Source: Octopus sinensis
Taxonomy: Eukaryota
Length of the DNA: 64,000 nucleotides
Assembly (NCBI RefSeq): GCF_006345805.1
Contig: NC_042998.1
Coordinates: 86,056,001-86,120,000 of the forward strand
Direction of reading: 5' to 3'
Within the stretch, counting starts at the first letter, position 1, and each line of letters begins with the position of its first letter. The notes under the pieces are model-generated. The model was given only the letters and a program-made list of their open reading frames with translations. It searched no databases and was not told where the DNA came from. Shown here one piece after another: positions 1-63,075 of this stretch. The position numbers were made by a program, and so were the translations under genes.

Positions 1-1084
1 AATAAATAATGAAAATGAAATAAAATAAATAAAAAACAAAACAGCATTGTTGATAAGGGCATTTTCATTTATCTTTATTTATAAAACTTGTAGTCACTCA
101 GTTGAAAATGGGATGAGACATAAAATGATAAAAAGTTCATTGGTTAATTGAGAATATAGGCCCATTTGAGAGCACACTGTCTGAGAGTGGTGGTAGACTA
201 AAGTAAACACAGAAGGTTTTGCACTTGGTGACTATAAATGAGATGGGGAGGAAAGAGAATTTTGTACAAAATTTAGTCATGTCGACTGAAAAGTGTCAGA
301 TATGAGAATTCTTGGACATTAGTATAGATTTTCTTGATAACAAATGAGAAATCTCAGGTGCAATTTCGAAAGTGGAATATCTTGCAGATTGTATGAAGTC
401 ACAAGTGAAAATCAAGTGTGAAGATTTCAGCTTTCCCTTGAATTGAGTTACAGTTTGAATAATTGCAGCAACAGCCTGAACCTTGCTAAAAGCATCTAAA
501 TATCCAGAAACTGGTTTAAAATCGAGCAGCATGTTATGTTTACTATTTCAAAAGTAGACTGTTTTTATCATGATACCAGTGATAGAGAGGTTGTTTTGAA
601 GGACTTGGAACATCATCTTTCAGAGGAAGGTTCTTCATTTTTGAGTAATGAAGCATCTAGGTGGTCTGCTTTATTGTAGAGATCATGTCTCTCTTGAGGT
701 GAATCACTATTGTAGGACGTATTAGGTTTACAGTATTTCCAGAGATATAGTGTAAAACAAAGTAAACTAGAAGTGGATTTGAAAATGAACCAATATTTCC
801 TCAAGGACCAATAAAATGAATCTTAACAAATAAAGTGTTGTATTAAAGAAAAGTGGTGTGAAAATGCAAAAGTATATTGGTATAGTGTATCAGATGAAGC
901 ATCAATAGCTCAGAGTTAGCTTAAATTATTAAAAAGGGAAAAGGCAGTGAATATGATTTGATTGGTTAGAAAGAAATGGAAAATAGTTGATCAAGAGAAA
1001 GAAGCATGACAAAGACTGTAAAAATGATAAGAAACACAAAGTAGATATAATTTAACTGTAGTTCTGTAGTTGCAGGGTGTTGGT

Positions 1085-1449
1085 GAATAAAGCGTTATAT
1101 ATCATTGCCAGACAGCTGACTGGCTTCCGTGCTGGTGGCATATGAAAAAACATTCGAGCGAGGTCGTTGCCTGTGCCACTGGACTGGCACCTGTGCAGGT
1201 GGCACATAAAAAACACCATTTGAGCGTGGCCGTTGCCAGTACTGCCTGACTGGCCCTCATGCCGGTGGCACGTAAAAGCACCCACTACACTCCTAGAGTG
1301 ATTGGCGTTAGGAAGGGCATCCAGCTGTAGAAACTCTGCCGGATCAGATTGGAGCCTGGTGCAGCCATCTGGTTCGCCAGTCCTCAGTCAAATCGTCCAA
1401 CCCATGCTAGCATGGAAAGCGGACATTAAATGATGATGATGATGATGAT
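1085..1449 (+). mobile_element. Abundant SINE-like element with RTE-related 3' end and (GAT)n tail
   Basis: Contains the family core ggaagggcatccagctgtagaaac...catgctagcatggaaagcggac followed by (tga)n. The same family recurs many times in the window, and the duplicate is at about 50420-50780. Confidence 0.85.
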
Positions 1450-2374
1450 ATATTCAGTATCTAAGCAGTGTGTAAGTTGCATTTATAGCTATACAGCCAT
1501 GAATTTTACCATCATACTTTCACTAAAGAGTTGTTTAGTTCAGCAGTTTATTGTTTTAAATGAATTATTAGATTCATGGCCTTCTATTTATTTTTTCCCT
1601 TTTTTTGAGATAAGCATTATGTAATACCTACTTTGAGTATCATTATGTATGATACTAGTTAAGGCAGTGAGCTGGCAGAATCATTACTAGACCTAACAAA
1701 ATGCTTGGCAGCATTTCTTCCAGCCTCCAGATTCAAATTCAGCTGAAGTTGACTTTGTCTTTCGTCCTTTTATTATTGATGAGATAATTACCAGTTGAGC
1801 ATTGGGGTTGATGTAATCGGTTAGCCACCTTTCCCCTAAAATTTCAGGGCTTGTGTATACAGTAGGAAGAATTATGTATGATACTGGTATATGCATTATT
1901 TCTTTGTGGCTTTTATTGAGAATTTTGATTATATTTACAGAGGAGTTTTCATTTGTTTTACCCTTACTAAAGTAATGTTTGACAATTGCAAAAAGTATGG
2001 TAGGAAGATGAATAAATTTAATGTTTTGTTGGAATATTTGAAAATGTGAGCCTGAGAAGATAAAAACAGGCAAAGAAGGGGTGCTTAAAGGAAGCATATC
2101 TGAGGAGGAAGGATTTCAAAATCTGTTTTGTTTGAAGTATAGAGTAAGTTAAGTTGGATGAGGTACTTTTAGCCAACTTGGTGAGAATCAGAGAGTGTGA
2201 TATTATTAACAATGATATAGAGAGAATATAACTTGATAATTGGGAGAAGAGTATTGTTGAATTAAGGTTTTGCTTATATTTTGCCTGTATCAGATATATG
2301 TACTATTATTTATGTATTTATAATAAAACATTAATTTCTTGAATAGGAACATAATTCTTTGTATTATTTTGTAG

Positions 2375-2407
2375 AACGGATTTGTTGAGTTTACTCCTGA
2401 GTTTACG
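2375..2407 (+). CDS. Cadherin module copy A, 33-nt microexon (NGFVEFTPEFT), part of EC1
   Basis: ttttgtag acceptor and ACG|gtaaga donor, phase 0/0. It fills the gap between ...IDREEVP and DGSVGN... in frame. A paralogous exon lies at 51704-51736. Confidence 0.8.
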
Positions 2408-2454
2408 GTAAGAATATATACTTCTAATACTTAACTTTTTAAGAGTGGCCTGTT

Positions 2455-2977
2455 GTCATCATCATCTTCATTGTCATCATCATCATAATCATCGTCACCA
2501 CCACCACCACCACCTTCCTCCTCCTCCTTCTCATCATCATCATCATCATTAACATCTGTTGACCATGCTGGCATTCATATGATGGTTTGACCAGTGCTGG
2601 TAAGCTGAGGTACTGCACTAGACTCAAGTCTGATTTGGCATGGTTTCTGTGACTGGATGCCCTTCCTAAAGCCAACCACTCTGAGAGTGTAATGGGTGCA
2701 TTTATGTGCCACCAGCATGGGTGCCAGTTGCATGACACCATATCTGTCATGACTAAGATTCCACAGGACTTGATGGTTCATCTTCTCAAGCATATTGCCA
2801 AAAGTCTTGGTCATTTGTCATTGCCTCCATGAGGCCCAACACTCAAAAGGTGCTTTTTACTTATCACATGCACAGGTGCCAGTTACGTGACATCAGCATC
2901 AAACACATGATTTCACTTGGCCTGATGGGTTTTCTCAAGCACAGCATATCACCAAATGTCTCGGTTATTAGCCATTG
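2455..2977 (-). mobile_element. SINE/RTE 3'-end fragment
   Basis: (cat)n, then the ggatgcccttccta core and the RTE-type 3' segment gtcattgcctccatgaggcccaac. Confidence 0.7.
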
Positions 2978-3024
2978 TCAGTAAGGTGAGAATTAACACC
3001 TTGTAGAGTTATATATATATATTT

Positions 3025-3360
3025 CATCATCATCATCATCATCGTTTAACGTCTGCTTTCCATGCTAGCATGGGTTGGACGATTTGACTGAGGTCTGGCG
3101 AACCAGATGGCTGCACCAGGCTCCAATCTGATCTGGCAGAGTTTCTACAGCTGGATGCCCTTCCTAATGCCAATCACTCCAAGAGTATAATGGGTGCTTT
3201 TACGTGCCACCGGCACGAGGACCAGTCAGGCAGTACTGGCAACGACCATGCTCAAATGGTGCTTTTTATGTGCCACCTGCACAGGAGCCAGTCCAGCGGC
3301 ACTGGCAATGACCTTGCTTGAATGTTTTTTCATGTGCCTCCAGCACAAGTGCCAGTAAGG
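3025..3360 (-). mobile_element. SINE-like element, inverted relative to 1085-1449
   Basis: Reverse complement of 1135-1445 at roughly 90% identity over about 310 bp. Confidence 0.85.
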
Positions 3361-3399
3361 CGATGCAGGTAACGATCATATATATATATATGTATATTA

Positions 3400-4535
3400 T
3401 ATCATCATCATCATCATTTTGCATCCATTTTCTATGCTGGCATGGGTTCGACAGTTTGGCATGTAGCTGGCCAGCTGGCAGCTGTCCAGACTCCAGTTGT
3501 CTGTTGCGGCATGGTTTCTATGGCTCGCCTTTCCTTATGCCAATCACTTAACAGAGTGTGCTGGATGTGCATTTTACATGTTACCAGCATAAGTGCATTT
3601 ACACAGCACCAGCACAGGTGCTTTTTTATGTGGCCCCTGGAGGTGTCTGAAGCTTCTATGTGTGGAAGACAGCATTTTACTTAACTTGACATGTCTTATC
3701 AAGAATAGCAAATTGCTACATCTCCTTTGTCATTGCCTCAGTGAGGCCCATCTTCCAAAGATCTTTTCTCACCACTTTGTCCCACGTATTCTTGGATCTA
3801 CCCCTCCCGCAGGTACCCTTCACAATTAGAGCTTAGCACTTCTTTACACACTTGTCCTCATCCATACACATCACTTGACCAAACCAGTGCAGTCTTCTCT
3901 CTTGCACACAGCATCCGATGCCTCTTATATCCAGTTTCCCTCTTGAATCATATACACTCTGTTGTGTATGCACATTGACATGACTCATCCAGTGGGGAAT
4001 GCTAGCTTCCTTTCTTTCAAGCTTTCAGAAGTCCTCTGTAGTCAAAGTACGTTTCACTGCCATGTAACATAGCTGTACATACACAGGCATCATACAATCT
4101 GCTTTTCACTCTGAGAGAGAGGCCCTTAGTTATCAACAAAGATAGAAGCTCTCTGAACTTTGCCCAGCCTATTCTTATTGTAGCAACTACACTTTCAGAA
4201 TTTTCTCCACCACTGCTAACTTGGTCTTTTAGGTAAAAGAAGTTATCTACTACTTGTAATGAGTCCCCCGAGTGTTTGAGGGAATCTGTTGCTTGTAGAT
4301 TATTAGCGCTTATTGTACCTGCACATTTGCCTCACACAAAGACTCTATTCTCCATTAACCTTCCTGTGATGCCACTTCACTTCTTATATGTCCAAAGCTT
4401 GCACTGGGTACAACACATGGAATTTATCCCAACACCCTTCTTACATAACAAGGAGAACCATCTCCCAGACGGGACTTGTGAATTATCTGTTGAGTCAAGT
4501 AAAACCAAAATTGTAGTTGTGGCCAGTGTCCTCTA
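3400..4535 (-). mobile_element. RTE-clade LINE 3' fragment with SINE-like tail, degenerate
   Basis: Homologous to the 3' part of the RTE at 32200-33100 (Cys-rich segment, DSFxYLGD, MLHGSETW region). The duplicate is at about 55420-56555. Confidence 0.75.
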
Positions 4536-4539
4536 ACTG

Positions 4540-5120
4540 GTTCCGGTGCCAGAGGCAAATAAAATGCACCATCCAAACTTGGATCCGAACATAATCAAAG
4601 CCAGCAACACCTGACTGGTCCCTGTGCCGGTGTCACGTAAAAAGCACCATCAGAATGTGGCTGATGCCAGTACCCTCTGACTGGCTCCCTTGCCAGTCAC
4701 ACGTAAAAAGTACCATCCAAATATGGCTGATGCCAGTACCCCTGACTTGCTCCTTTGGCGGTGGCATGTAAAAAGCACTATCCTAATGTGATCAATGCCA
4801 GGACTGCCTGACTGGCCCCCATGTTGGTGGCACCTGAAAAGCACCATCCGAACGTGGCCAATGCCAGTACCCCATGACTGGCCCCATGCTGGTGGTACAT
4901 AAAAAGCACTATCCAAACATGATCAATGCCTGGCCTGCTTGACTAGCTCCTGTGTTGGTGGCATGTAAAAAGCACTCTCAGAGTGGTTGGTATTAGGAAG
5001 CGCATCCAGCTATAGAAACATTGTTAGATCAGATTGGAGCCTGGTGCTGGCTCTCTGGACCTCAGTCAAACCATCCAACCTATGCCAGCATGGAAAATGG
5101 ACTTTAAACGATGATGATGA
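4540..5120 (+). mobile_element. SINE-like element with internal degenerate tandem units of about 60 bp
   Basis: Repeated ...gtaaaaagcaccatcc...gccagtaccc units, then the family core and a (gat)n tail. The duplicate is at about 56560-57150. Confidence 0.75.
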
Positions 5121-5940
5121 TCTGTTATTCTCACTGCTGCTGTTGCTTTTGTTCAATGTCCTTTGTTTACATCTTCCTGGAAAACTTTCTTTAAAATCTT
5201 ATAACCAGCTTTGTTAGTAAAGTTTTGGATTTTGAAAAAAAATTTTGTTCTGCTCTTGCTTTTTGAAGTTAGTTTTACTAAAACATTTTCCAGATTGATA
5301 TTTGAGCACTATTTCTTAAACTTAAATGTAACATTGAAAAGTAGAGGTGGGGCATTGCCCTCCATTGCCCCTTTCTTTCCAGTGCCACCTTGGATCTTTC
5401 CACCCCACCGAGAGGAGTGGTATTGCCCATTTTGGAAACTACTGGTTTAACCAATACATTAAACAAATGATCATTAGTTTGATAGATAGATATTTAAATA
5501 ATTGACTAAGTATAAAGAAGTGGAATTGAACCTGAATGTGTGTTGTTCTTATCGGCAGATTGACTCTCCCAAGATAGAACTAAATATATTGAGAAGTAAT
5601 GTTTGTCACCACTTCAATATAGCTGTTCTGTATGAACTGACATTACTACCATTCTTTAACCCCCAAGAGGAAGTCTCCTCTAGTAATCTGCACCTAATAT
5701 AATTTGCAAGCAAAGGTGTGAACCTCTACCATCTTTATGTGACTTGACAGAACCAGCAGACTGTCTGGTTTTGGGCTACTTTTGCCTATCCTCAGTGCTG
5801 GATACCTGTCTGCTAGTGACAGCAGTAATTCCCCCCAGTTCGCAACATATAGAAAAATAAGCGACAATCAGTCACTGATCTTGCAACAAGCAAAGTAACT
5901 AGTTAGAAAATCTTTGCAAGAGATGAAATGAGTAATTATA

Positions 5941-6076
5941 CTGAGAAGTAATGTTTGTTGCCACTGCAACATGGCTGTTCCAAATGAACTGGTGTTACTA
6001 CCATTTTTAACCCCAAGAGGAAGCCCCCTTTGTGTAGAACAGCCATCTTGAAGTGGCAATAAACATTACTTCTCAG
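5941..6076. mobile_element. Tc1/mariner-type MITE, 136 bp
   Basis: Terminal inverted repeats ctgagaagtaatgtttgttgccac / gtggcaataaacattacttctcag (1 mismatch), flanked by TA. A truncated relative lies at about 5550-5690 and the duplicate at 57974-58109. Confidence 0.7.
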
Positions 6077-6389
6077 TATAGTCACTACTTTCATCTCTTA
6101 CAGAGATTTCCCAACTAGCTATTTTGCTTGTGAAAAATATATATTGTTATTCAAAATTAATTTGACTTATCCTTTATATTATTAACAGCAGTGATAAAAT
6201 AAGTTCCGATAATGTAATTTATAATGAGTTCATACAAATGATTGCAAAACTGTTGAATTATCATATGCATGCTTTTTTGTGATGTAAAAATACTTATATT
6301 GAAGAGAAGCTTACACATCAACAAGATCAAATTCATGTTCTTGAAATTGTATGGAATTATAACATTTGATATCTGTTTTTTAAATTCAG

Positions 6390-6488
6390 GATGGCTCAGT
6401 AGGTAATATATGTTTCTTAATAATTCTTGATGAAAATGATAATGTTCCAGTTTTCGGAAGTCAACGATATAAAGCAACAATACCAGAG
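6390..6488 (+). CDS. Cadherin module copy A exon, EC1/EC2 linker (DGSVGNICFLIILDENDNVPVFGSQRYKATIPE)
   Basis: taaattcag acceptor, GAG|gtaaga donor, 99 nt, phase 0/0. Contains the DxNDNxPxF calcium-binding linker and the xPE motif. Confidence 0.93.
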
Positions 6489-7020
6489 GTAAGAATTTGA
6501 CATTTTCTTTCAAAAGATTCTCTCTCATTCTCCCTCTCTCTTGTTAATGCTTCATGGAAGTGAAGTATTGAACATGACTGCAGAAGGCATAAGAATACTT
6601 GAAAGAAATGAGATGCGCATGCATGCTCTACTGGATGTGTCAGATTAATGTACATGTATGACAAAGTGCAAATGTGCTGAGAGAAAAATTGGGCAAAAGA
6701 GGTACCAGATGTGGTGTACAAAAGAGAAGACTGCTGATATGGTCTTGTGATGGGTATGGATGAGCACAGCTGCATAAAGAAGTACAGACTGTTGAATGTG
6801 GATGGAACTTATGAAAGAAGACGATTCAGGAAAACATGAAATGAAGTAGTGAAGACCAGTGTCAGGTTGTTGAACCTTGCATAAAAGACTGAGCTGATTA
6901 GAGATTCAGTGTGCTCAAGAAGCCTCATCAATCTCATAAAAAAATGAGGTCAAACAGTCAAACTGTCTAACCCATGCTAGCATGGAAAGTGGACATTAAA
7001 TGATGATGATGATGGTGATG

Positions 7021-7053
<33 letters not shown>

Positions 7054-7934
7054 GCATCAGGTAACCATCTGAGTAAGGATTATGTTGAAATCATAAGATG
7101 CAGCATGGTAGATGTGAACTATTTTGGTAGATGAACTTATTGAATCAATGATGAATATCACTGGATGGCGAGCAGAGGAACGCCCAACAAACTGACAGCC
7201 AGAATCAGTTTCCTTAGATTTTATTCTAAATACAGATTCTGCTTTGTTGACTGCTTCAGTGCACAGTCTGAATTGTTGATATGCCTACATTTAATGTTCC
7301 TTTTTAATTTTGGACATCAACTAGACAATGGCAGCCTTTAATGAAGCTACATTATTATGAAGATGGATATTAGTGTCTCTTTCATCATCATTATCATCAT
7401 CATCATGATCATCATCATCTTTCAGTGTCTGATTCCATACTGGCATGGATCGGATGATTTGACAAGAGTTGGCCTTGGCTCCATTTGTCTGTTCTGGCAT
7501 GATTTCTATTTAGCCACTTTTATATGCTTCTATATGGCACCAGCACATAGGACTGGCACAGGCACTTCTACATACCACTGGCACAAGTGCTTTTATATGA
7601 CACTGGCAATGGTGCTTTTACATAACATTGGCATGGACACTTTTACATGGCACCACCAAAGGTACTTTTATGCGAAACTAGCACCCACAAGTCTGCAAGA
7701 CTAGGATTTCTTGGCTGAGAGAGAGATGCAGAAGATATGCCTATAGGCATGGACGGCCTTAGTTTTACTTAGCTTAGCATGTTTTCTCAAGCTGGCCACC
7801 TGTCATCTCCTCTTTGAGGCCCAACATCTGAAGATTCTTTCTCACCACTTCATCCATGTCTTCTTGGATCTGCCCCTTCCACATGTTCCCTCCATAATTA
7901 GAGATCTTCACTTCTTGATGCAGCTTTCCTCATC

Positions 7935-8915
7935 CATTGCTCCAAATGTAGTGATCCATGAGATTTAAATCTGGCAAGTTTGGAGGCCACAAGTTTGGTG
8001 TTACATGATTGTAACGATTGACTGACATTCATTCTTGGGTTATATGAATTTGAAAGAAAGTGCTGAGTCTATTGAAGTACATGTGGCTTTCTATTGCATA
8101 CTTAATCCACCTAGGACTTAACAGATCTATCTCCAGCAGCTCAATGTATACTATAGTATTAACTCTAAAATCCTGTCAAAAGATGTGAGGTGGAATGACA
8201 TGGCATTCACCACTAAGCATTCCTAAATTCATCGCAATTGCTGGAAACTTGGTGTGCATCATTCAATGAAAACAGAAGGATCTGCACTTAACCATCAGGA
8301 ATTGGAATTTTTCCTGTTAGACTTTTGGCTGTGGATGAAGATTTTTTCATCAGAGAAGAATCAAAGCATGCCATATTTGTAAGGGTTTTAACCTTGTTAA
8401 GTAACCACTTGGCAAGGATCAAAGGATTTTTCTGTGTCTTTGCAGACATCAATTGGCCTCTCCTCAGTACTTGTATCGAATGTCCTCATGCACCAGTTTT
8501 GATAGTCTGTTCTGACACCTAAAGTTTTTTGGCAATAGCCCTCATAGATTTTGTGGAATCATCATCAATAATGTTTTGAACCCATTGGATGAATTGCAGT
8601 GTCGTTATAGTGTAAAAATGTTTAGAATGCTTTTTTCTCTTTGATACGTTTGAAACATCCCTGCCAGAGTCTTCCATTTCTATTTGAACTTTACGTGCAA
8701 AGATCTTGCAACATGTAGAAAGCTGGTAATTTCTACATTGATGCATTCCACATATATCGCAGCAATAACTGCATATCTTTTCATTTTTTGTGTCAGCACT
8801 TTATCTACCATGGATAATAGGAAAGAAATAAAATTCTTTTAATTGATTAAGAGAATAATAAACTGATAATTATTTAGTGTCCTGAAATACTTCTCACACC
8901 CATTGTATATTAGAT
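7935..8915 (-). mobile_element. Degenerate DD37D/maT-like (Tc1/mariner superfamily) transposon
   Basis: The minus strand encodes WPPNLPDLN-like and IIDDDSTKSMRAIAKKL segments, with stops and frameshifts. The duplicate is at about 60685-61640. Confidence 0.65.
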
Positions 8916-8989
8916 TGGTAAGGAAGCTCTGTTGCATTTCAAGATAGAAAAGTAAATAATTATTTGGTTTTAATTGATATTTTTTTCAA

Positions 8990-9870
8990 GATAGTATATT
9001 CTCTCATTCTTGATAACATAATTCCAATCATTTGGGTGAAAACTTTTCAAGTTTCATTTTTAAGCTGATCACAATTGTTAGATATTTATAGATTGTTTTC
9101 ACTCTAATAAATGTTGCAATGGTCTGAAAAGATAATAGAGGAACAAAATCGGTAGAGTAAGGATGGTGAGGTAAACTTCCATATTTAAGGCAGTAATCCT
9201 TTCATGAATGACTTCAGTAGGATATGATTTTGTGTTATTATGTTGGAGCAACACCTCTGTACATTTGATTAATGAGGAATACCTTTGCTGCAATTTTTTT
9301 GTGTGCAATGCTTCCACCTGATAACAGTATTCCTCTGCATTTTACTTTAACACTTAATAGTATAAAACATCCTTTATACCCAACCAAACAGAGCACATTT
9401 TTAGCTGTTGTAAATGTTTGAGGATGGATTCTCTTTTTTCATTTTTGTTAAATATAATTATAGAAAACCAACTTTTCACCACCTGTGATGATTCTATCCA
9501 GGAAAGGTTTTGTAGGTAGTCTACTCTTCAATAATGAGCAGAAAACAACTTTATGATTAAGCTGATAAGCAGTCAAGTGATGAGGCACCCATTAACCAAA
9601 TTTAGATACTTTTCCTAGTTCATGCAAGTGTTTTGTGATCAAAATGTGACTTCACTTGAACTGTTTTGTCAATTTTCATGTAGTTTCCCTTGGGTTTTCT
9701 CAACTATGGTTTCCAGAAGCTCAATATTGACAGAACATGGTCATGCAGATCAAGGAAATATGTGAAAGAAATATTTCCTGAGTAAAACTGGCCAAACCAT
9801 CATTGGAATGTCCAGACACTTCAAGCTTTGTTTTCACAGACAGAATGAATATTTCTTGTTTCCATTGCTT
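8990..9870 (-). mobile_element. Degenerate mariner transposase remnant
   Basis: Minus-strand LLQHNNTKSY (for QHDNARPH) and, in the duplicate at 61837-62052, EVLPHHPYSTDFVPS (for HPPYSPDLAPS). Confidence 0.7.
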
Positions 9871-10251
9871 CTTTTGAATTCATACAATATGCAGTGTCTG
9901 TTAGGGGTCTGATCTAAACTAATTTTAAAAGGTAAAATAAATCATACAAATTTAACCATTATATTATAAAGTAATCTGTGAAGAATAAAGCATTAAAGTG
10001 TAAAACTTAATGTTTATTTGACAATAAGTATTGAAAAAGTACCCTGAAGTGATTGTGTTAAAAATGTTACAGGACCTTCTTTCTGACCTAATGTTTATAC
10101 ATGTATTGCTTTCATAGCAAAGACATTTGTGGTAGGGGGGAATTGTTTTCTGAAATGTGTCATCTTTATCATAGAATGAATTAATATGAAAACTAGTGAA
10201 AAAAAATATTTGCTGAATTATATTTTCTTAATATTTTGCTTTTTTTTGCAG

Positions 10252-10338
10252 GATTTTCCAGTAAACACTAAAATACCAAATTTGCAGATAACAGCTACTG
10301 ATGCTGATGAAAATCCCAATCTAGAATATTCTTTGATA
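10252..10338 (+). CDS. Cadherin module copy A exon, EC2 (DFPVNTKIPNLQITATDADENPNLEYSLI)
   Basis: tttttttgcag acceptor, ATA|gtaagg donor, 87 nt, phase 0/0. Contains the AxDxD and Y-S-L cadherin motifs. Confidence 0.93.
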
Positions 10339-11830
10339 GTAAGGATACTGGTTTATTTTTTGCTTTATACTCACAAGTCATTCAATGTATTTTAACATGA
10401 AAGTAACTAAATTAAACCAACCTGTACTTTAGGAAGTTTCACTTTCCCAAGATGATTCTTAATACAATTTACTGAGACCAAATTCATAGGTTACTGCTTT
10501 GATACACAGCCTTCATAACTGATGTAATCATAAGAATTGCTTCATGCTTGTGTTTCGTCTAAGTTGGTCTCAATGGTTTAAGTCTACTTAACAGTAGATA
10601 GTTACCATGGACATGGGGACATGGGTTGCATTGTTTACTGGTGTAAACTGATGATTTTGTTTGTTGTCTGCAGTTCTGAGTTAATTTCCTCTGGTTAGCA
10701 GGCAATTTTAAATACAGTGGGACTTAATCCTAAAAGAGATTTAGCTTTTACCTACATAATGTTATAGAAACAACAATGGAACATTTGCTCTGTGGAGTCT
10801 TGAACTACGAAAATGAAGATGAATAATTTGCTCAGCCAAATTTTGATACACCTATCTCTGTCCCTCTATACTTTTAATCAGTCAAATGGCACAAAGCTGC
10901 ACCCAGTCAATACTATTTCTCCCAGCATGGAAAACAGACTTTGAATAATGATGATGATGATGGTATCTATGTATATGGTTCATATATGTATGTGTGTGTC
11001 TACACACACATATAATTGTCTGTAAAGTCACAAGAGGGACTGAAGGATGACAAGTTTAGTGCATGTCATATATCAGATTAACCAAAATCATGAATCCACT
11101 CTTTATATTGGAATGATTGATCAAAAATTGTTTTAAGCTGGACATTTAGACACATGCACACACTTCTATCATTTTTCTTGCCATTCCATATACCTCACTA
11201 ATTTCTTCTCTTACTAAAGCAGAAAAATAATTTCCTTCCTTGTACAGTGTTACTTTTTCTTTTTCCATTTTTTTTTCATTTCATCTCTCATTTCTCTATT
11301 AACACCATTTCACACCAATACCCTTACACACACTATTCACATTCCTCCTACCTTCTTTCCACCCTCACACTTGCACCCACTGCTACCTCCTCACTTCTAT
11401 ATTTTACTTGCTCACAATATAATTACTCATGTACACCAACCATCCGCATATCTCCGCTATCCCATGCCATTACATCCAACACTTATATTTTGCCAATATA
11501 AGAAATTATTATTAGTATAATTTTTTGATGATAACTAGATTTTGGGTTACTTGTCAAATGTCTGGTAATAACATGTTACAAAAGCTGTCATGAAGGTTTC
11601 TCAAAGTTTTTTTCAATTTTATTTAGGCCTTAAGTTAAAAACAGATTTAGTTTTGTCTTATTAAATAAGATGTTGCAGCAAATAATATTCATAACTGTCT
11701 GAAAACCAACTCTTTTAATGCACACCTCTGAGTTTCATTGTCTTAAAATATCTTCTCATCTTAAAAAATATCTTTTGTATTATTCCTGTTATTCACTATT
11801 CTTATAAATGTTTATTTGTTTCAATTTCAG

Positions 11831-11842
11831 CCTGCTGGCCAG
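11831..11842 (+). CDS. Putative 12-nt microexon (PAGQ) in EC2 of copy A
   Basis: Pyrimidine-rich tttatttgtttcaatttcag acceptor and a perfect CAG|gtgagt donor, phase 0/0. It lies in order between ...YSLI and NSKGIED.... The frame is also kept if it is skipped, so it is not strictly required. Confidence 0.6.
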
Positions 11843-26885: not shown

Positions 26886-27005
26886 AATTCAAAAGGAATT
26901 GAAGACTACATGAAAATTGAAGATAAATATAAAGGTTTCATCACAGTAGTAAAAGCACTGGACTATGAAACAAGAAACTTTTTTGAATATACAGTACAAG
27001 TATTT
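26886..27005 (+). CDS. Cadherin module copy A exon, EC2 (NSKGIEDYMKIEDKYKGFITVVKALDYETRNFFEYTVQVF)
   Basis: ttttcttttacttgtag acceptor, TTT|gtaagt donor, 120 nt, phase 0/0. Contains the G-x-I-x-V and LDYE motifs. Confidence 0.93.
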
Positions 27006-41090: not shown

Positions 41091-41207
41091 GATGGAAAGT
41101 TTACAACAAATGCTTCTGTATGGATCCAAGTTGAGGATGTTCAAGATATGCCACCAGCATTTACAAGTTCCGGCTTTGTTGAAAAAATCAAGGAAAATTC
41201 AAACAAG
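41091..41207 (+). CDS. Cadherin module copy A exon, EC2/EC3 linker (DGKFTTNASVWIQVEDVQDMPPAFTSSGFVEKIKENSNK)
   Basis: ttaatttcag acceptor, AAG|gtaata donor, 117 nt, phase 0/0. Contains the DVQDxPPxF linker and the EN motif. Confidence 0.93.
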
Positions 41208-41643: not shown

Positions 41644-42385
41644 TATTCAATACACATAAAGGGCGAAATATAATTAATTTAATAAAATTAATAAATTTCA
41701 CCTAGTAGTTTTTTCGGTATGGAAATGACCATATTTGGTAAGGATTATATTAATTATAATAAAGGGTTAATTGCAACAAGTTGCTCAAAACCACATACTG
41801 AAAATATTAGAAATAGTAGCCAAATAGGTCACTATTTCTACTACTAGTAAAAAAGTCTCCACAAACAAACAGAATTTGTAACCCGTATATGGTTATTAAA
41901 TTAATTATATTTCACCCTTTATGTGTATTGAATACTATTACTCCCATACAATGAATCTGCGAAACTTCATTTCGTTGGTAAAGTTTTTGTAACTCACGTG
42001 GTAATTTTGAAAGGAGATACGAATTCGCCTGTCTATATAAATGTGGAGATGCTAGCGGACTGTTATATCGTTCGATGTCACCTGTTCGAGTTGATGTAAT
42101 GGGTGAGTTATTTTTCTAGCATTTCTAGATTTATAGGAAATATTATGTTGACAAGGAAATGAACTTTCGATTCTAATCCAGAAACGAATTCGTCCATAAT
42201 TAATCCAATAGGCTGGGATTTCGTTGTCTTCTTTCTCTTTACCATATATGGGTTACAAATTCTGTTTGTTTGTGGAGACTTTTTTACTAGTAGTAGAAAT
42301 AGTGACCTATTTGGCTGCTATTTCTAATATTTTCGGTATGTGGTTTTGAGCAACTTGTTGCAATTAACCCTTCATTATAATTAAT
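41644..42385. mobile_element. Unclassified 742-bp element with two interleaved inverted-repeat pairs
   Basis: A 41644-41684 pairs with A' 41894-41934 (1 mismatch); B 41749-41893 pairs with B' 42241-42385 (4 mismatches). Flanked by (TATG)n. Confidence 0.75.
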
Positions 42386-42878
42386 ATGTATGTATGTATA
42401 ATGGTCTTTTTTCAGCTTCTATCTACCAAATCCACTCATAAGGCTTTGGTCAGACTTTGGCTACTGTAAAATAATTTGCTGATCACGAAGGAAACTAAGT
42501 GTACAAGCTACATACAAAGATGCTTTGCATGGGGCCATTGTGAGGAATGCATGCACCAAATTCCAGAGCCTTCTTGAGGCATTGGTAGAAGTTGAGAGTG
42601 GCTACTTTGAATACCGATAATCTAATATTTTTTGATGTTTTAAAATAGTTTATTTTTTGATGTTTTAAAATAATTTATCTTTTGATTGGATACTGTGTTT
42701 TCTTTACTTTTTCCCTCACTGACTTCACCACAGTTTCTATGCCTCTCAAATGCCCTTATCTTCCTCACTCTCTGACCTACCTGCATGGCCCATTCACACC
42801 TCTCTTGCCTTCAATGACTCTGGATTTCTCTATCTTTGTGACTTCTTTCTGTTCTATATTTTAAAGATGAGGTATTCT

Positions 42879-44790: not shown

Positions 44791-44869
44791 GGAACTCTCA
44801 TCACTACAGTGACAGCTGAAGATCAAGACAGAGGCATACCGAATGATATTGGTTATGAAATTATTAAAG
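44791..44869 (+). CDS. Cadherin module copy A, last visible exon, start of EC3 (GTLITTVTAEDQDRGIPNDIGYEIIK+G)
   Basis: ttttcatttcacag acceptor, AAAG|gtataa donor, 79 nt, phase 0/1. Contains the AxDxDxG and Y-x-I motifs. Confidence 0.9.
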
Positions 44870-45260
44870 GTATAATTTCTAAGATTTATTCTCTAAATCT
44901 TGAAATAAAACAAAAATGCAATACTGTGCTGTATTTATTCAAAGTATTTAGTATATATGTACATATATGTATCCATGTGCCTACATGCATACCAGAATAT
45001 ATATATATATATTTAAAGAGATGATGAGCGATTGCTAGAAGAATATTGAGCTTTATTTGATAATCAGTTGGTCTAGCAAGCAGGGCCTCATATTAGTGAG
45101 TGGGGCCTGTGCACGTTGATGCTGTCGAGAGGTAGGCCCCCAAATGGCATGCATTCTCTCTTGATGACCCCATACACTTGCTGCCTTCTGGTATGCAGAG
45201 TTCTCGACTGGTAGCACTTGCATGTGTATGTTGTTTGCAAGACATATATATGTATGTATG

Positions 45261-45289
<29 letters not shown>

Positions 45290-45293
<4 letters not shown>

Positions 45294-45550
45294 GACGCAC
45301 ATAAAAAACACCATTTGAGTGTGGCCATTGCCAGTACCGCCTGACCGGCCCTCGTGCCAGTGGCACATAAAAGCACCCACTACACTCTCGGAGTGGTTGG
45401 TGTTAGGAAGGGCATCCAGCTGTAGAAACTCTGCCAGATCATGATTGGACCCTGGTGCAGCCATGTGGTTCGCCAGTCCTCAGTCAAATCGTCCAACCCC
45501 TGCTAGCATGGAAAGCGGACGCTAAACGATGATGATAATGATGATGATGA
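45290..45550 (+). mobile_element. SINE-like element
   Basis: Same family as 1085-1449, with a (gat)n tail. Confidence 0.85.
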
Positions 45551-46148
45551 TATATATATATATATATATCAATTTAATAAAGTTACAACATGGTCTGGTT
45601 TTCATGTTTTTTATTATTGTATTTTTAAAATGTTCTTTTTACAATGTTGTAGTGTGTTAAGCATTAAAAAAATATTTTGTAATGTTCATAAAGTCAAATT
45701 AGTGCTTCTATATTTTGAGTTGAGTGCTTGATAATTGTAGTAAAATGACTGGCTTCTTGCTTTTTATACCTTCTAGAAGGCTCCAACAAGCTGAATTTTT
45801 GGAATATGGTTTTGACCAATCAGCATGCCACTTAAATGTCATGGTATGCCAGGCACACCGATATTACTAGCATAGATCCCACTTTTATTTTAAACAATTA
45901 GCTTGTGGTTTACATGTAATGGCTTCACAAGTGAGCAAACCTAGCTGATTTTGATTGTTTTTATATAAGTTGGTGGGAGTCTTCTGTAATTTGTTTATAT
46001 TTATATGTTAAAGATATTTTTTAATCCACATCACTAACTGGTTGTTATTATTGAAGTCTTTATTATTTTTTTTATCTTCTGCTGGTCTTAAACTATAAAA
46101 AGTTCTACATATCTAAATTAAAAATAATTTTAAAAAATTGATCAAATA

Positions 46149-46289
46149 TTAGGTTGTCCCAAAAGTTCGTAAATACTTGCGAAAATTGAATTTTTACTCG
46201 CCAAGTACTAACAAAAACAACAAAAATTATTCCTCAAAATAAAGACCATTATTTTCCAAGACTTTCTACGAACTTTTGGGACAACCTTA
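46149..46289. mobile_element. Mariner-type MITE, 141 bp
   Basis: Perfect 21-bp inverted repeat aggttgtcccaaaagttcgta (46151-46171 / 46267-46287) with a TA target duplication. Confidence 0.85.
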
Positions 46290-46481
46290 TAGAAATTGAA
46301 TCAAACTTTCTGTTTGTTACTTGTGTTTATGGTACATTTACTTTTCAGCAAGCTAAATAGTTTATTATAGATTTGATCATAAAAGAATTATACTACTTTA
46401 TATTTCTATTTCATTGTTTCAACCAATGCTTCATATGCCATACCAGATACTTCAATATGAATATTTCTTTTGTTATGTCAG

Positions 46482-46535
46482 CTACCACCAGTGATTTGCC
46501 TCAACAAATAGAAGTAAAGGAAAATCAAAACGCTG
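46482..46535 (+). CDS. Cadherin module copy B, first visible exon, start of EC1 (x-TTSDLPQQIEVKENQNA-G)
   Basis: tttcttttgttatgtcag acceptor, GCTG|gtaagg donor, 54 nt, phase 1/1. The V-x-EN-xxx-G motif joins in frame to 49118. Confidence 0.8.
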
Positions 46536-49117: not shown

Positions 49118-49290
49118 GCACTGTTGTTGTAACTGTTGAAGTGACTGGAAACAATTTCCCTAAATTAATTTTAGTGGGAGATATACTGAACTATTTAAAA
49201 GTAGTAGATAATCCTTCTTGTACTAATACTGCATCATGTAACAAGTTTGATTTGGTTACCATAAAAAAAATTGACAGAGAAGAAGTTCCG
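49118..49290 (+). CDS. Cadherin module copy B exon, EC1 (GTVVVTVEVTGNNFPKLILVGDILNYLKVVDNPSCTNTASCNKFDLVTIKKIDREEVP)
   Basis: ttttctttttcag acceptor, CCG|gtatgt donor, 173 nt, phase 1/0. Contains the GTVV and IDRE motifs. Confidence 0.9.
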
Positions 49291-51703
49291 GTATGTACAA
49301 AACTTCTTGAAATAATTTCCACATGCTGACATTAATAAATAATGAAAATAAAATAAAATGAATAAAAAACAAAACAGCATTGTTGATAAGGGCATTTTCA
49401 TTTATCTTTATTTATAAAACTTGTAGTCACTCAGTTGAAAATGGGATGAGACATAAAATGATAAAAAGTTCATTGGTTAATTGAGAATATAGGCCCATTT
49501 GAGAGCACACTGTCTGAGAGTGGTGGTAGACTAAAGTAAACACAGAAGGTTTTGCACTGGTGACTATAAATGAGATGGGGAGGAAAGAGAATTTTGTACA
49601 AAATTTAGTCATGTCGACTGAAAAGTGTCAGATATGAGAATTCTTGGATATTAGTATAGATTTTCTTGATAACAAATGAGAAATCTCAGGTGCAATTTCG
49701 AAAGTGCAATATCTTGCAGATTGTATGAAGTCACAAGTGAAAATCAAGTGTGAAGATTTCAGCTTTCCCTTGAATTGAGTTACAGTTTGAATAATTGCAG
49801 CAACAGCCTGGACCTTGCTAAAAGCATCTAAATATCCAGAAACTGGTTTAAAATCGAGCAGCATGTTATGTTTACTATTTCAAAAGTAGACTGTTTTTAT
49901 CATGATACCAGTGATAGAGAGGTTGTTTTGAAGGACTTGGAACATCCTCTTTCAGAGGAAGGTTCTTTTTCATTTTTGAGTAATGAAGCATCTAGGTGGT
50001 CTGCTTTATTGTAGAGATCATGTCTCTCTTGAGGTGAATCACTATTGTAGGAAGTATTAGGTTTACAGTATTTCCAGAGATATAGTGTAAAACAAAGTAA
50101 ACTAGAAGTGGATTTGAAAATGAACCAATATTTCCTCAAGGACCAATAAAATGAATCTTAACAAATAAAGTGTTGTATTAAAGAAAAGTGGTGTGAAAAT
50201 GCAAAAGTATATCGGTATAGTGTATCAGATGAAGCATCAATAGCTCAGAGTTAGCTTAAATTATTAAAAAGGGAAAAGGCAGTGAATATGATTTGATTGG
50301 TTAGAAAGAAATGGAAAATAGTTGATCAAGAGAAAGAAGCATGACAAAGACTGTAAAAATGATAAGAAACACAAAGTAGATATAATTTAACTGTAGTTCT
50401 GTAGTTGCAGGGTGTTGGTGAATAAAGCGTTATATATCATTGCCAGACAGCTGACTGGCTTCCATGCTGGTGGCATATGAAAAAACATTCGAGCGAGGTC
50501 GTTGCCTGTGCCACTGGACTGGCGCCTGTGCAGGTGGCACATAAAAAACACCATTTGAGCGTGGCCGTTGCCAGTACTGCCTGACTGGCCCTCATGCCGG
50601 TGGCACGTAAAAGCACCCACTACACTCCTAGAGTGATTGGCGTTAGGAAGGGCATCCAGCTGTAGAAACTCTGCCAGATCAGTTTGGAGCCTGGTGCAGC
50701 CATCTGGTTCGCCAGTCCTCAGTCAAATTGTCCAACACATGCTAGCATGGAAAGCAGACGTTAAATGATGATGATGATATATTCAGTATCTAGGCAGTGT
50801 GTAAGTTGCATTTATAGCTATACAGCCATGGTTTTTACCATCATACTTTCACTAAACAGTTGTTTAGTTCAGCAGTTTATTGTTTTAAATGAATTATTAG
50901 ATTCACTGCCTTCTATTTATTTTTTCCCTTTTTTTGAGATAAGCATTATGTAATACCTACTTTGAGTATCATTATGTATGATACTAGTTAATGTAGTGAA
51001 CTGGCAGAATCATTACTAGACCTAACAAAATGTTTGGCAGCCTTTCTTCCAGCCTCCAGATTCAAATTCAGCTGAAGTTGACTTTGTCTTTCGTCCTTTT
51101 ATCATTGATGAGATAATTACCAGTTGAGCATTGGGGTTGATGTAATCGGTTAGCCACCTTTCCCCTAAAATTTCAGGGCTTGTGTCTACAGTAGGAAGAA
51201 TTATGTATGATACTGGTATATGTATTATTTCTTTGTGGCTTTTATTGAGAATTTTGATTATATTTACAGAGGAGTTTTCATTTGTTTTACCCTTACTAAA
51301 GTAATGTTTGACAATTGCAAAAAGTATGGTTGGAAGATGAATAAAGTTAATGTTTTGTTGGAATATTTGAAAATGTGAGGCTGAGAAGATAAAAACAGGC
51401 AAAGAAGGGGTGCTTAAAGGAAGCATATCTGGGGAGGAAGGATTTCAAAAACTATTTTGTTTGAAGTATAGGGTAAGTTAAGTTGGATGAGGTACTTTTA
51501 GCCAACTTGGTGAGAATCAGAGAGTGTGATATTATTAACAATGACATAGAGAGAATATAACTTGATAATTGGGAGAAGAGTATTGTTGAATTAAGGTTTT
51601 GCTAATATTTTGCCTGTATCAGATATATGTACTGTTATTTATGTATTTATAATAAAACATTAATTTCTTGAATAGGAACATAATTCTTCGTATTATTTTG
51701 CAG

Positions 51704-51736
51704 AACGGATATGTTGGGTTTACTCCTGAGTTTACG
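51704..51736 (+). CDS. Cadherin module copy B, 33-nt microexon (NGYVGFTPEFT)
   Basis: ttttgcag acceptor and ACG|gtaaga donor. Paralog of 2375-2407. Confidence 0.8.
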
Positions 51737-52469
51737 GTAAGAATATATACTTCTAATACTTAACTTTTTAAGAGTGGCCTGTTGTCATCATCATCTTCAT
51801 TGTCATCATCATCATAATCATTGTCACCACCACCACCACCTTCCTCCTCCTCCTTCTCATCATCATCATCATCATTAACATCTGTTGACCATGCTGGCAT
51901 TCATATGATGGTTTGACCAGTGCTGGTAAGCTGAGGTACTGCACTAGACTCAAGTCTGATTTGGCATGGTTTCTGTGACTGGATGCCCTTCCTAAAGCCA
52001 ACCACTCTGAGAGTGTAATGGGTGCATTTATGTGTCACCAGCATGGGTGCCAGTTGCATGACACCATATCTGTCATGACTAAGATTCCACAGGACTTGAT
52101 GGTTCATCTTCTCAAGCATATTGCCAAAAGTCTTGCTCATTTGTCATTGCCTCCATGAGGCCCAACACTCAAAAGGTGCTTTTTACTTATCACATGCACA
52201 GGTACCAGTTACGTGACATCAGCATCAAACACATGATTTCACTTGGCCTGATGGGTTTTCTCAAGCACAGCATATCACCAAATGTCTTGGTGATTAGCCA
52301 TTGCTTCCATGAAGCCCAGTGTTTGAAAATCATGCTTCACCACCTCGTTCCATGTCTTCCTGGGCCTACCTCTTCCACAGTTTCCCCCCACAGTTAGAGG
52401 TCAGCACTTCTTTACACAACTGTCCTCGTCCATACACATCTTAAATTTTTGTTAATACTTGGAGGTCTA

Positions 52470-58577: not shown

Positions 58578-58590
58578 ATCATATGCATGC

Positions 58591-59004: not shown

Positions 59005-59125
59005 ATGCTTTTTTGTGATGTAAAAATACTTATATTGAAGAGAAGCTTACACATCAACAAGATCAAATTCATGTTCTTGAAATTGCATGGAATTATAACA
59101 TTCGATATCTGTTTTTTAAATTCAG

Positions 59126-59224
59126 GATAACTCAGTAGGTAATATATGTTACTTAAAAATTCTTGACGAAAATGATAATGTTCCAGTTTTCGGAAGTCAT
59201 CGATATAAAGCAACAATACCAGAG
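59126..59224 (+). CDS. Cadherin module copy B exon (DNSVGNICYLKILDENDNVPVFGSHRYKATIPE)
   Basis: taaattcag acceptor and GAG|gtaaga donor. Paralog of 6390-6488. Confidence 0.93.
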
Positions 59225-62988: not shown

Positions 62989-63075
62989 GATTTTACAGTA
63001 AACAATACAATACCAAATTTGCAGATAACAGCTACTGATGCTGATCACAATCCCACTCTAAAATATTCTTTGATA
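62989..63075 (+). CDS. Cadherin module copy B exon (DFTVNNTIPNLQITATDADHNPTLKYSLI)
   Basis: ttttttttgcag acceptor and ATA|gtaagg donor. Paralog of 10252-10338. Confidence 0.93.

What the first reader, a model, noticed from the sequence alone, without database searches (positions are those of the whole stretch)
44791..46535. Module is phase-1 symmetric and breaks off inside EC3: possible variable-cassette / constant-region splicing
Seen: copy A ends with a phase-1 donor after ...GYEIIK-G, about one third into EC3, and copy B begins with a phase-1 acceptor at the start of EC1. I found no exon continuing EC3 in the 1.6 kb between them. Direct A-to-B splicing is in frame (EIIK-A-TTSDLPQQ) but would leave an incomplete beta-sandwich in the middle of the protein. 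Inference, three models. (1) Alternative whole-module choice: each cassette splices to shared downstream exons that finish EC3, analogous to vertebrate clustered Pcdh or chelicerate sDscam but with multi-exon cassettes. (2) In-frame read-through, lengthening the ectodomain. (3) A truncated or secreted partial paralog.
Basis: inference. Interest (0 to 1): 0.75.

Follow-up and report, generated by a model that had tools for sequence, protein, structure and literature searches.

The report
Duplicated exon block in octopus cadherin
Two consecutive copies of a nine-exon block encoding the fast-evolving tip of an octopus adhesion protein sit head to tail, and whether cells use them as interchangeable tips, string them together, or ignore the second copy cannot be settled from sequence alone.

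Summary
Exon E10 (44791-44869) ends in a phase-1 donor about 38% into cadherin domain EC3. Exon E2 of the next copy (46482-46535) starts with a phase-1 acceptor 1,612 nt later, and the join is in frame. The block E2-E10 is 774 nt.

The gap holds only repeats. The window contains neither a leader (signal-peptide) exon nor the exon that completes EC3.

Related Octopus sinensis and O. vulgaris loci show the intact gene: leader, E2-E10, then E11 (DSCSAFSIS...), which finishes EC3, followed by more EC domains, a transmembrane segment and a tail. So the window holds a partial tandem duplication with breakpoints in introns 1 and 10, both phase 1 in the intact gene.

Across the family, E2-E8 diverge 2-5 times faster than their introns, and dN/dS exceeds 1 in all 15 pairs. 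E10-E12 are almost invariant. That is a sharp variable/conserved boundary.

Copy B, however, has no leader exon and changes at the intron rate. It therefore fails the promoter-per-cassette hallmark of clustered protocadherins and sDscam.

No transcript evidence was available. My ranking: leaderless by-product 0.40, alternative cassettes 0.27, read-through 0.20, artefact 0.07.

The parts
1..11237 (+). Part of copy A (intron 3 to intron 6) that matches copy B 49334-64000 at about 97% identity, introns included
   Evidence: Self-blastn: 1-2977/49334-52303 at 97.9%; 3010-6261/55027-58294 at 97.0%; 6269-11237/59005-64000 at 97.1%.
2375..2407 (+). E4 of copy A, a 33-nt micro-exon encoding NGFVEFTPEFT (tag acceptor, gtaaga donor)
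6390..6488 (+). E5 of copy A (DGSVGNICFLIILDENDNVPVFGSQRYKATIPE): end of EC1 and the EC1-EC2 linker. Holds hypervariable codons 6, 7 and 9.
10252..10338 (+). E6 of copy A (DFPVNTKIPNLQITATDADENPNLEYSLI): start of EC2. Holds hypervariable codons 18, 20 and 23.
11831..11842 (+). E7 of copy A, a 12-nt micro-exon encoding PAGQ. It is identical, with identical flanks, in all five copies that reach it.
26886..27005 (+). E8 of copy A (NSKGIEDYMKIEDKYKGFITVVKALDYETRNFFEYTVQVF): middle of EC2
41091..41207 (+). E9 of copy A (DGKFTTNASVWIQVEDVQDMPPAFTSSGFVEKIKENSNK): end of EC2, the linker and strand A of EC3
44791..44869 (+). E10 of copy A (GTLITTVTAEDQDRGIPNDIGYEIIK + G): EC3 strands B-C, ending in a phase-1 donor AAAG|gtataa. 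It differs at 1 of 79 nt from the intact O. sinensis gene, against 52 of 394 in the flanks.
44870..44968 (+). First 99 nt after E10, homologous to the start of intron 10 of the intact gene (93% to L005/L002). Homology ends here.
44969..46050 (.). Duplication junction interval. It contains (TA/CA)n microsatellites, a SINE-like repeat at 45297-45569 with many copies in the window, and 180 + 480 nt not found in any other fetched locus except L001 (from 45937 on). No exon-like feature.
46051..46481 (+). Last ~430 nt before E2, homologous to the 3' end of intron 1 of leader-bearing copies (90-93% to L004/L005). It is interrupted by a MITE at 46147-46291 (25-nt terminal inverted repeats, TA duplication). 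The polypyrimidine tract and AG are conserved in all copies.
46482..46535 (+). E2 of copy B ((A)TTSDLPQQIEVKENQNA(G)): phase-1 acceptor and phase-1 donor. It encodes the mature N-terminus and strand A of EC1.
49118..49290 (+). E3 of copy B (GTVVVTVEVTGNNFPKLILVGD...IDREEVP): body of EC1
51704..51736 (+). E4 of copy B (NGYVGFTPEFT)
59126..59224 (+). E5 of copy B (DNSVGNICYLKILDENDNVPVFGSHRYKATIPE)
62989..63075 (+). E6 of copy B (DFTVNNTIPNLQITATDADHNPTLKYSLI). The rest of copy B lies beyond the window.

Best explanation
What is shown. The window comes from an octopus of the O. vulgaris/O. sinensis group. It holds two consecutive copies, A and B, of a nine-exon 5' block (E2-E10, 774 nt) of a multi-exon cadherin gene. 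The intact gene reads: leader exon, E2-E10, E11 and onward (rest of EC3, EC4-EC6, transmembrane segment, tail).

How it arose (inferred). Unequal recombination between intron 1 and intron 10 of such a gene produced the copies. Both introns are phase 1 in the intact gene. The 'phase-1 symmetry' and the in-frame A-to-B join are therefore inherited accidents of where the breakpoints fell, not a cassette design. The native partner of the E10 donor is E11, which lies outside the window.

Family evolution (shown). The family's N-terminal exons E2-E8 are under strong diversification. Variation is a mosaic of patches plus hot codons with several states. E10-E12 are held constant.

Use (inferred). Copy B has no leader exon of its own and changes at the intron rate. 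I therefore read the A|B junction as a by-product of birth-and-death duplication in a dynamic cadherin array, with copy B a leaderless passenger. If the locus is transcribed through, default splicing E10(A)->E2(B) across the short 1.6-kb intron would give an in-frame mRNA carrying an orphan EC3 fragment.
For: - Duplication: about 97% self-identity including introns.
- Exon map and canonical splice sites for every exon.
- Intact gene in O. sinensis: L005/L002 has the leader at 17077-17151, E2 at 20268, E10 at 98289-98367, E11 at 107144, then exons up to the TM and tail. E11's acceptor is cag|AT, phase 1.
- The E10->E11 junction is present in P0005.
- Breakpoints: homology to intron 10 stops 99 nt after E10; homology to intron 1 starts about 430 nt before E2.
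- No leader exon or E11 anywhere in the window.
- Lineage-unique substitutions in copy B: exons 7/431 (1.6%) against flanks 47/2308 (2.0%).
- Family-wide diversification: exon divergence exceeds flank divergence (4.8% v 1.4% for wA-L006; 4.8% v 1.0% for the orthologues L004/L005; Fisher p 4e-7 to 5e-3). dN/dS is 1.3-6.2 in 15 of 15 pairs.
- Conserved remainder: E11+E12 0/320 against introns 36/1431 (p 0.0015); E13-E19 13/1089 against 51/3454.
- Other partial or truncated copies exist. L006 loses homology after E8 and carries unrelated tail exons; L001 is another copy.
Against: - E10 of copy A is far better conserved than its flanks (1/79 v 52/394, p 7e-4). That suggests it is still translated in a context where EC3 must fold, meaning it is joined to an E11-type exon.
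- All exons of A and B keep open frames and canonical splice sites.
- Five of six exon indels across the copies are in frame, four of them in L001, which shares copy B's upstream sequence.
- The duplicated block matches the hypervariable region almost exactly, as a true variable cassette would.
- With only about 2% unique divergence, 'neutral' and 'mixed selection' cannot be told apart for copy B.
- No transcript data were available in either direction.
Confidence: 0.4

Rival explanations
1. Alternative N-terminal cassettes. Each mRNA carries one E2-E10 module, chosen by promoter or leader use or by block skipping, and its E10 donor joins a conserved E11-type exon downstream. This would give one cadherin many different EC1-EC2 tips.
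For: - Sharp evolutionary boundary: E2-E8 are hypervariable (dN/dS >1 in 15/15 pairs; exon divergence exceeds intron divergence), while E10-E12 are invariant.
- The duplicated block equals the variable part plus E10.
- E10(A) is conserved at 1/79.
- Donor and acceptor phases match E11.
- Some modules do have their own leader exon (L006, L005, L004).
- In O. vulgaris, a module with a leader (L006) lies about 690 kb upstream of the intact gene on the same strand.
- A half EC3 followed by EC1 is structurally implausible, so selection should favour one module per protein.
Against: - Copy B has no leader exon, and its first exon has a normal, fully conserved acceptor only 1.6 kb from the E10(A) donor. 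That acceptor should out-compete any distant E11.
- No complementarity between the conserved E10-downstream segment and intron 10 beyond what shuffled sequences give.
- Copy B shows no excess of unique exon changes.
- The database holds no gene model or protein with a second module joined to E11.
- The downstream exons are themselves duplicated.
Confidence: 0.27
2. In-frame read-through. All modules between the leader and E11 are included, giving a longer ectodomain with repeated EC1-EC2-(partial EC3) units.
For: - The block is 774 nt with phase 1 at both ends, and the A+B ORF is intact.
- The E10(A)->E2(B) intron is short (1,612 nt), with good canonical sites and no competing exon in between.
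- This is the default outcome of the splicing machinery.
Against: - It would leave a 41-residue A-B-C strand fragment of EC3 with no partner strands before each internal EC1. The junction falls inside a predicted beta-strand.
- Diversification of EC1-EC2 is hard to explain for domains buried mid-ectodomain.
- No protein in the database carries an E10-E2 junction.
Confidence: 0.2
3. Assembly artefact. Two haplotypes, or a collapsed and re-expanded repeat, were wrongly placed in tandem.
For: - About 97% identity over more than 14 kb.
- The junction is made of microsatellites and a SINE.
- An unplaced O. sinensis contig (L001) starts exactly inside this junction, showing that assemblers struggle here.
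Against: - The window contains no Ns.
- Copy A is closer to sequences from two other assemblies (L001, L006: 1.4% flank divergence) than to copy B (4.4%), so A and B are not two alleles of one locus.
- Relative to A, copy B carries a 2.7-kb insertion and an expanded minisatellite.
- The junction keeps 99 nt of intron 10 and 430 nt of intron 1 in the expected order.
Confidence: 0.07

Closest known systems
Vertebrate clustered protocadherins (Pcdh alpha/gamma): variable exons spliced to constant exons
   Same: Tandem, same-strand array of cadherin N-terminal coding units. Each unit ends in a donor whose natural partner is a shared type of downstream exon. The variable units diversify while the downstream part is conserved.
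   Different: A Pcdh variable unit is one large first exon with its own promoter and no acceptor, and it encodes the whole ectodomain plus the TM. Its constant exons encode only the cytoplasmic tail (own knowledge; summarised in PMC5775551). Here the unit is nine small exons covering EC1-EC2 and 38% of EC3. Copy B starts with an acceptor and has no leader. The 'constant' part would include most of the ectodomain.
Chelicerate sDscam-beta 5' cassette arrays (PMC5775551)
   Same: Multi-exon 5' cassettes that encode the N-terminal one or two adhesion domains, duplicated in tandem and lineage-specific, upstream of shared exons.
   Different: Each sDscam cassette is transcribed from its own alternative promoter (PMC5775551). 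No leader exon or first exon precedes copy B here. sDscam cassettes also encode whole Ig domains, whereas this block ends inside a domain.
Mutually exclusive exon clusters born by tandem exon duplication (Dscam1 type)
   Same: Tandem duplicates with compatible phases lie between shared flanking exons, and including both copies would damage the fold.
   Different: Known clusters are mostly single exons and rely on steric, spliceosomal or RNA-pairing mechanisms (own knowledge). Here the unit is about 50 kb with nine exons. A simple search for pairing found nothing above shuffled controls.
In-frame multi-exon tandem repeats that are all included (human LPA kringle IV-2 type; own knowledge)
   Same: A phase-symmetric multi-exon unit repeated head to tail, so that read-through stays in frame.
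   Different: The LPA unit is a complete domain. This unit ends 38% into a beta-sandwich.
Octopus protocadherin expansion by tandem gene duplication (Albertin 2015, as summarised in PMC6339937)
   Same: An octopus-lineage, tandemly duplicated cadherin-superfamily locus.
   Different: The literature describes whole-gene duplicates, not leaderless partial blocks. The nearest non-octopus proteins share only about 30% identity. Nothing on this locus was found in the literature searches.

Membership tests
Cadherin superfamily | Extracellular cadherin (EC) repeats with calcium-binding linker motifs | tested here: met
   Pfam PF00028 matches full length at module residues 114-208 (E 2.3e-17). Four stretches match once E11 and later exons are appended. 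Linkers LDENDNVPVF and VEDVQDMPPAF are present. PDB hits are CELSR1, Pcdh-gamma, Pcdh15 and Cdh23.
Clustered-Pcdh / sDscam type variable-constant locus | Tandem same-strand array of variable units | tested here: met
   Copies A and B lie head to tail in the window. Further copies are L001 and L006.
Clustered-Pcdh / sDscam type variable-constant locus | Every variable unit has its own promoter and first (leader) exon, without an upstream acceptor | tested here: not met
   No leader-exon homologue occurs in the 1.6-kb gap or anywhere in the window (tblastn, blastn, nhmmer). Copy B begins with a conserved acceptor. Promoter activity itself is not testable here.
Clustered-Pcdh / sDscam type variable-constant locus | The terminal donor of each unit is spliced to shared constant exons | not testable with these tools
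   The donor is present and phase-compatible with E11. The E10->E11 junction is seen only for single-module genes or models. No transcript data were available.
Clustered-Pcdh / sDscam type variable-constant locus | Variable units diversify while constant exons are conserved | tested here: met
   E2-E8: exon divergence exceeds flank divergence, and dN/dS is 1.3-6.2. E10: 1/79. E11+E12: 0/320 against 36/1431. E13-E19: 13/1089 against 51/3454. Caveat: copy B itself shows no lineage-specific excess.
Clustered-Pcdh / sDscam type variable-constant locus | The unit encodes whole domains (Pcdh: whole ectodomain plus TM) | tested here: not met
   The unit ends 41 residues into the ~107-residue EC3, inside a predicted strand.
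Dscam1-type mutually exclusive splicing | Docking and selector RNA pairing, or another exclusion mechanism | tested here: inconclusive
   The longest reverse-complement match between the conserved 99 nt after E10 and intron 10 of the intact gene is 13 nt, the same as for shuffled sequences. The thermodynamic scan timed out. The true downstream intron for this locus is not in hand.
In-frame included tandem repeats (LPA KIV-2 type) | Phase-symmetric unit whose length is a multiple of three | tested here: met
   774 nt with phase 1 at both ends; the read-through ORF is open.
In-frame included tandem repeats (LPA KIV-2 type) | The unit corresponds to complete folding domains | tested here: not met
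   The unit ends inside EC3.

The most novel reading that the evidence does not exclude
Octopuses of the O. vulgaris group may carry a cadherin locus in which several ~50-kb, nine-exon modules encode hypervariable EC1-EC2 tips and are used one at a time, each spliced through its conserved E10 donor to shared conserved exons (rest of EC3, EC4-6, TM, tail). That would be a splicing-based adhesion-diversity system. It would be a cadherin counterpart of sDscam and clustered Pcdh that evolved independently in cephalopods, with cassette boundaries inside a domain and at least some cassettes lacking their own leader exon.
Probability: 0.25. Interest if true: 0.85.

Novelty: new variant of a known kind. 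Interest (0 to 1): 0.55.

Why it matters
Cephalopods are the textbook case of expanding protocadherin-like diversity by whole-gene duplication rather than by splicing. A locus where a hypervariable N-terminal block is duplicated on its own, upstream of conserved exons that it needs in order to fold, is the raw material from which a variable/constant system could arise, and it may already work as one.

Independently of how the copies are spliced, one result stands. The EC1-EC2 exons of this octopus-specific cadherin family change several times faster than their own introns; between the sister species O. sinensis and O. vulgaris, dN is 0.061 against dS 0.010. Exons from E10 onward are frozen. 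That pattern is typical of recognition molecules under diversifying selection, such as self/non-self, gamete or pathogen recognition. It marks the family as a candidate recognition system worth expression and binding studies.

Tried and rejected
- Leader exon in the gap or elsewhere in the window. I searched with tblastn (PAM30, word size 2) using three leader peptides, blastn with the L004 leader exon and flanks, and an nhmmer profile of three leader exons. None gave a hit. The in-frame ATG just before E2 (MNISFVMSA) is only the translated polypyrimidine tract and is identical in all copies, including those with a leader.
- An EC3-completing exon in the window. tblastn with P0005 and nhmmer with E11 found nothing.
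- Transcript or protein evidence for E10->E2 or for alternative modules joined to E11. Three searches of the 5.8-billion-protein database returned only six octopus models, none decisive. No octopus transcript-derived proteins appeared among the Logan or ENA hits.
- RNA pairing between the conserved E10-downstream segment and intron 10. The RNAduplex scan timed out. The exact reverse-complement search matched shuffled controls.
- Rfam on the gap gave only sub-threshold repeat-like miRNA hits.
- Literature. Nothing was found on this locus.
- Haplotig explanation. I rejected it as the main reading because A is closer to copies in other assemblies than to B.
- Array extent. I could not fetch chromosome sequence beyond the protein-anchored loci, so the number of modules and what follows copy B remain unknown. 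The source species could only be narrowed to the O. vulgaris/O. sinensis group.
Full report
**Source and large-scale structure.** The window is AT-rich, repeat-rich animal DNA. Its coding pieces match short gene models from Octopus sinensis and O. vulgaris named 'protocadherin gamma-like' or 'Fat 4' (P0001-P0004). Long stretches are 96-98% identical to loci from both assemblies. The source is therefore an octopus of the O. vulgaris/O. sinensis group. Self-comparison shows that 1-11237 matches 49334-64000 at about 97%, introns included. The offset grows from 49.3 to 52.7 kb because copy B carries a 2.7-kb insertion and an expanded 57-bp minisatellite.

**Exon map.** Using the octopus proteins, exact splice-site inspection and two micro-exon searches, I mapped one repeated block of nine exons on the + strand. 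I number them E2-E10; E1 is the leader (signal-peptide) exon seen only in related loci.
- Copy A: E4 2375-2407, E5 6390-6488, E6 10252-10338, E7 11831-11842 (12 nt, PAGQ), E8 26886-27005, E9 41091-41207, E10 44791-44869.
- Copy B: E2 46482-46535, E3 49118-49290, E4 51704-51736, E5 59126-59224, E6 62989-63075.

All sites are canonical AG/GT. The block is 774 nt (258 codons). E2 opens in phase 1 and E10 closes in phase 1. The spliced A(E4-E10)+B(E2-E6) sequence is one open frame reading ...GYEIIK-A-TTSDLPQQ....

**Where the module ends in the protein.** Pfam places a full-length Cadherin domain at residues 114-208 (EC2). EC1 is divergent. EC3 starts at PPAF, and the module ends 41 residues later. 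An AlphaFold model of P0005, which starts with E10, puts the E10/E11 junction inside a beta-strand spanning residues 19-27 (mean pLDDT 72).

**The gap (44870-46481).**
- The first 99 nt are homologous to the start of intron 10 of the intact gene.
- The last ~430 nt are homologous to the end of intron 1.
- Between them lie microsatellites, a SINE-like element (45297-45569), a MITE (46147-46291) and sequence unique to this junction.

Neither the leader exon nor the EC3-completing exon has a homologue in the gap or anywhere else in the 64 kb.

**The intact gene.** O. sinensis chromosome CM016860.1 (loci L005 and L002) carries, in one copy each, the leader (MLSIIFIGLLLMLGTVE|A), E2-E10 spread over 81 kb, then E11 8.8 kb after E10.
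- E11 has acceptor cag|AT (phase 1) and encodes DSCSAFSISN...EIRIESDNLDRED..., the rest of EC3.
- It is followed by exons for EC4-EC6, a transmembrane segment and a cytoplasmic tail (P0014, P0016).
- The E10->E11 junction is also present in protein P0005.

RefSeq splits this gene in two because the assembly has a 1-nt deletion in a T-run of E8. L004 is the O. vulgaris orthologue.

**Other related loci.**
- L006 is a second O. vulgaris locus about 690 kb upstream on the same strand. It has its own leader and E2-E8 and is 98.3% identical to copy A. It loses homology at window position 36667 and carries unrelated tail exons.
- L001 is an unplaced O. sinensis contig and a further copy (E2-E8). It begins inside the junction sequence that precedes copy B.
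- O. sinensis has at least two loci with the downstream exons: L002, and L003/L007.

The window therefore shows a partial tandem duplication with breakpoints in introns 1 and 10, inside a dynamic family of whole and partial paralogues. The phase symmetry is inherited from the intact gene.

**Evolutionary pattern.** Across the six copies, exons E2-E8 diverge faster than their own 250-nt flanks:

| Pair | Exon divergence | Flank divergence |
|---|---|---|
| wA-L006 | 4.8% | 1.4% |
| wA-L001 | 4.8% | 1.4% |
| wB-L001 | 9.0% | 3.2% |
| L004-L005 (orthologues) | 4.8% | 1.0% |

- Fisher p ranges from 4e-7 to 5e-3. The exception is wA-wB, at p 0.12.
- dN/dS exceeds 1 in all 15 pairs (1.3-6.2). For the orthologues, dS is 0.010 and dN is 0.061.
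- Variation is a mosaic of shared patches plus hot codons with three to five states: E5 codons 6, 7 and 9, and E6 codons 18, 20 and 23.
- Five of six exon indels are in frame.

The later exons behave differently.
- E10 differs at 1 of 79 nt between copy A and the intact gene, against 52 of 394 in the flanks (p 7e-4).
- E11+E12 are identical between two paralogous loci whose introns differ at 36 of 1431 sites (p 0.0015).
- E13-E19 show 13/1089 differences against 51/3454 in their flanks.

The family thus has a sharp variable/conserved boundary close to the end of the duplicated block.

**Limits of that evidence for the window itself.**
- Counting only substitutions unique to one copy, copy A has 0/332 in exons against 0.38% in flanks.
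- Copy B has 1.6% in exons against 2.0% in flanks. The excess is carried by L001 and L004.
- Copy B is also the most divergent of the upstream copies.
- Copy A is closer to L001 and L006 than to its neighbour B. This argues against a haplotig artefact, but it also means that A and B are not a fresh pair.

**Interpretation.** The structural conclusion is secure: a partial duplication of E2-E10, with E11 as the native partner of the E10 donor and no leader for copy B. How the copies are used is inference. I rank four readings.
1. **By-product (0.40).** The junction comes from birth-and-death duplication and copy B is a leaderless passenger. This fits the missing leader, the neutral-looking rate in B, the other truncated copies and the lack of any gene model.
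2. **Alternative cassettes (0.27).** One module per mRNA is joined to conserved E11-type exons. This fits the variable/conserved boundary, the conservation of E10(A) and the structural absurdity of an orphan EC3 fragment. It lacks a mechanism for bypassing the conserved E2(B) acceptor 1.6 kb away, and a simple search for RNA pairing was negative.
3. **Read-through (0.20).** This is the default of the splicing machinery but is structurally unattractive.
4. **Assembly artefact (0.07).**

**Comparison with known systems.** The locus shares the tandem array, the terminal donor and the variable/constant evolutionary split with clustered Pcdh and sDscam. It fails their defining feature of one promoter and first exon per cassette (PMC5775551) for copy B. 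It also fails the whole-domain rule. I therefore do not file it as a member of either kind.

**Searches that found nothing.** Three database searches returned only six octopus models and no transcript-derived proteins. Literature searches found no description of this locus.

Noticed in passing
window 11831-11842; L001 18565-18576; L004 52310-52321; L005 57065-57076; L006 63695-63706: A 12-nt micro-exon (CCTGCTGGCCAG, PAGQ). The exon and at least 25 nt of flank on each side are identical in all five copies, even though the neighbouring exons are hypervariable.
   Followed up: partly
L005 about 75500-75520 (E8 of the intact O. sinensis gene): A 1-nt deletion in a T-run (T6 to T5) shifts the frame. 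It explains why RefSeq models XP_036370914/919 end in a nonsense tail and why the downstream half is annotated as a separate gene (P0014). It could be an assembly homopolymer error or a real inactivation.
   Followed up: partly
E5 codons 6, 7, 9 (window 6405-6416 and 59141-59152); E6 codons 18, 20, 23 (window 10303-10320 and 63040-63057): Hot codons with three to five different amino acids among six copies, lying next to invariant calcium-binding motifs. The flanking introns are nearly identical. The pattern looks like targeted diversification or patchy gene conversion.
   Followed up: partly
window 58246-58576: A 57-bp minisatellite of 5.8 copies at 98% identity in intron 4 of copy B. Copy A has about one unit at the matching place. 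This accounts for part of the length difference between the copies.
   Followed up: no
window 52303-55027: A ~2.7-kb insertion in copy B relative to copy A. Part of it (52468-53740) recurs at 91-92% identity in L002 and L006, so it is a dispersed repeat.
   Followed up: no
window 46147-46291: A MITE with 25-nt terminal inverted repeats and a TA target duplication. It is present upstream of E2 in copy B and in L001 but absent from intron 1 of L004 and L005. It gives weak sub-threshold mir-548-like Rfam hits.
   Followed up: partly
window 41747-41893 and 42241-42387: A 147-nt inverted repeat at 97% identity, with arms about 350 nt apart, in the intron between E9 and E10 of copy A. It could form a long hairpin in the pre-mRNA.
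   Followed up: no
window 13896-15279 (+), 16338-17735 (-), 32691-33433 (-): Long ORF fragments that look like reverse-transcriptase or retrotransposon remnants, inside introns of copy A. I did not scan them against any family library.
   Followed up: no
L006 87532-87651 and 88664-88723: O. vulgaris models CAI9718147/8 splice E8 to two unrelated exons encoding a tail that ends ...LEDWLDSVLDD, which would give a short two-EC secreted-type product. These exons have no counterpart in the window.
   Followed up: partly
P0004 (O. vulgaris, locus L004): This model joins the leader exon directly to E3 and skips E2. E2 is 54 nt with phase 1 at both ends, so it could be a cassette exon in its own right.
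   Followed up: no
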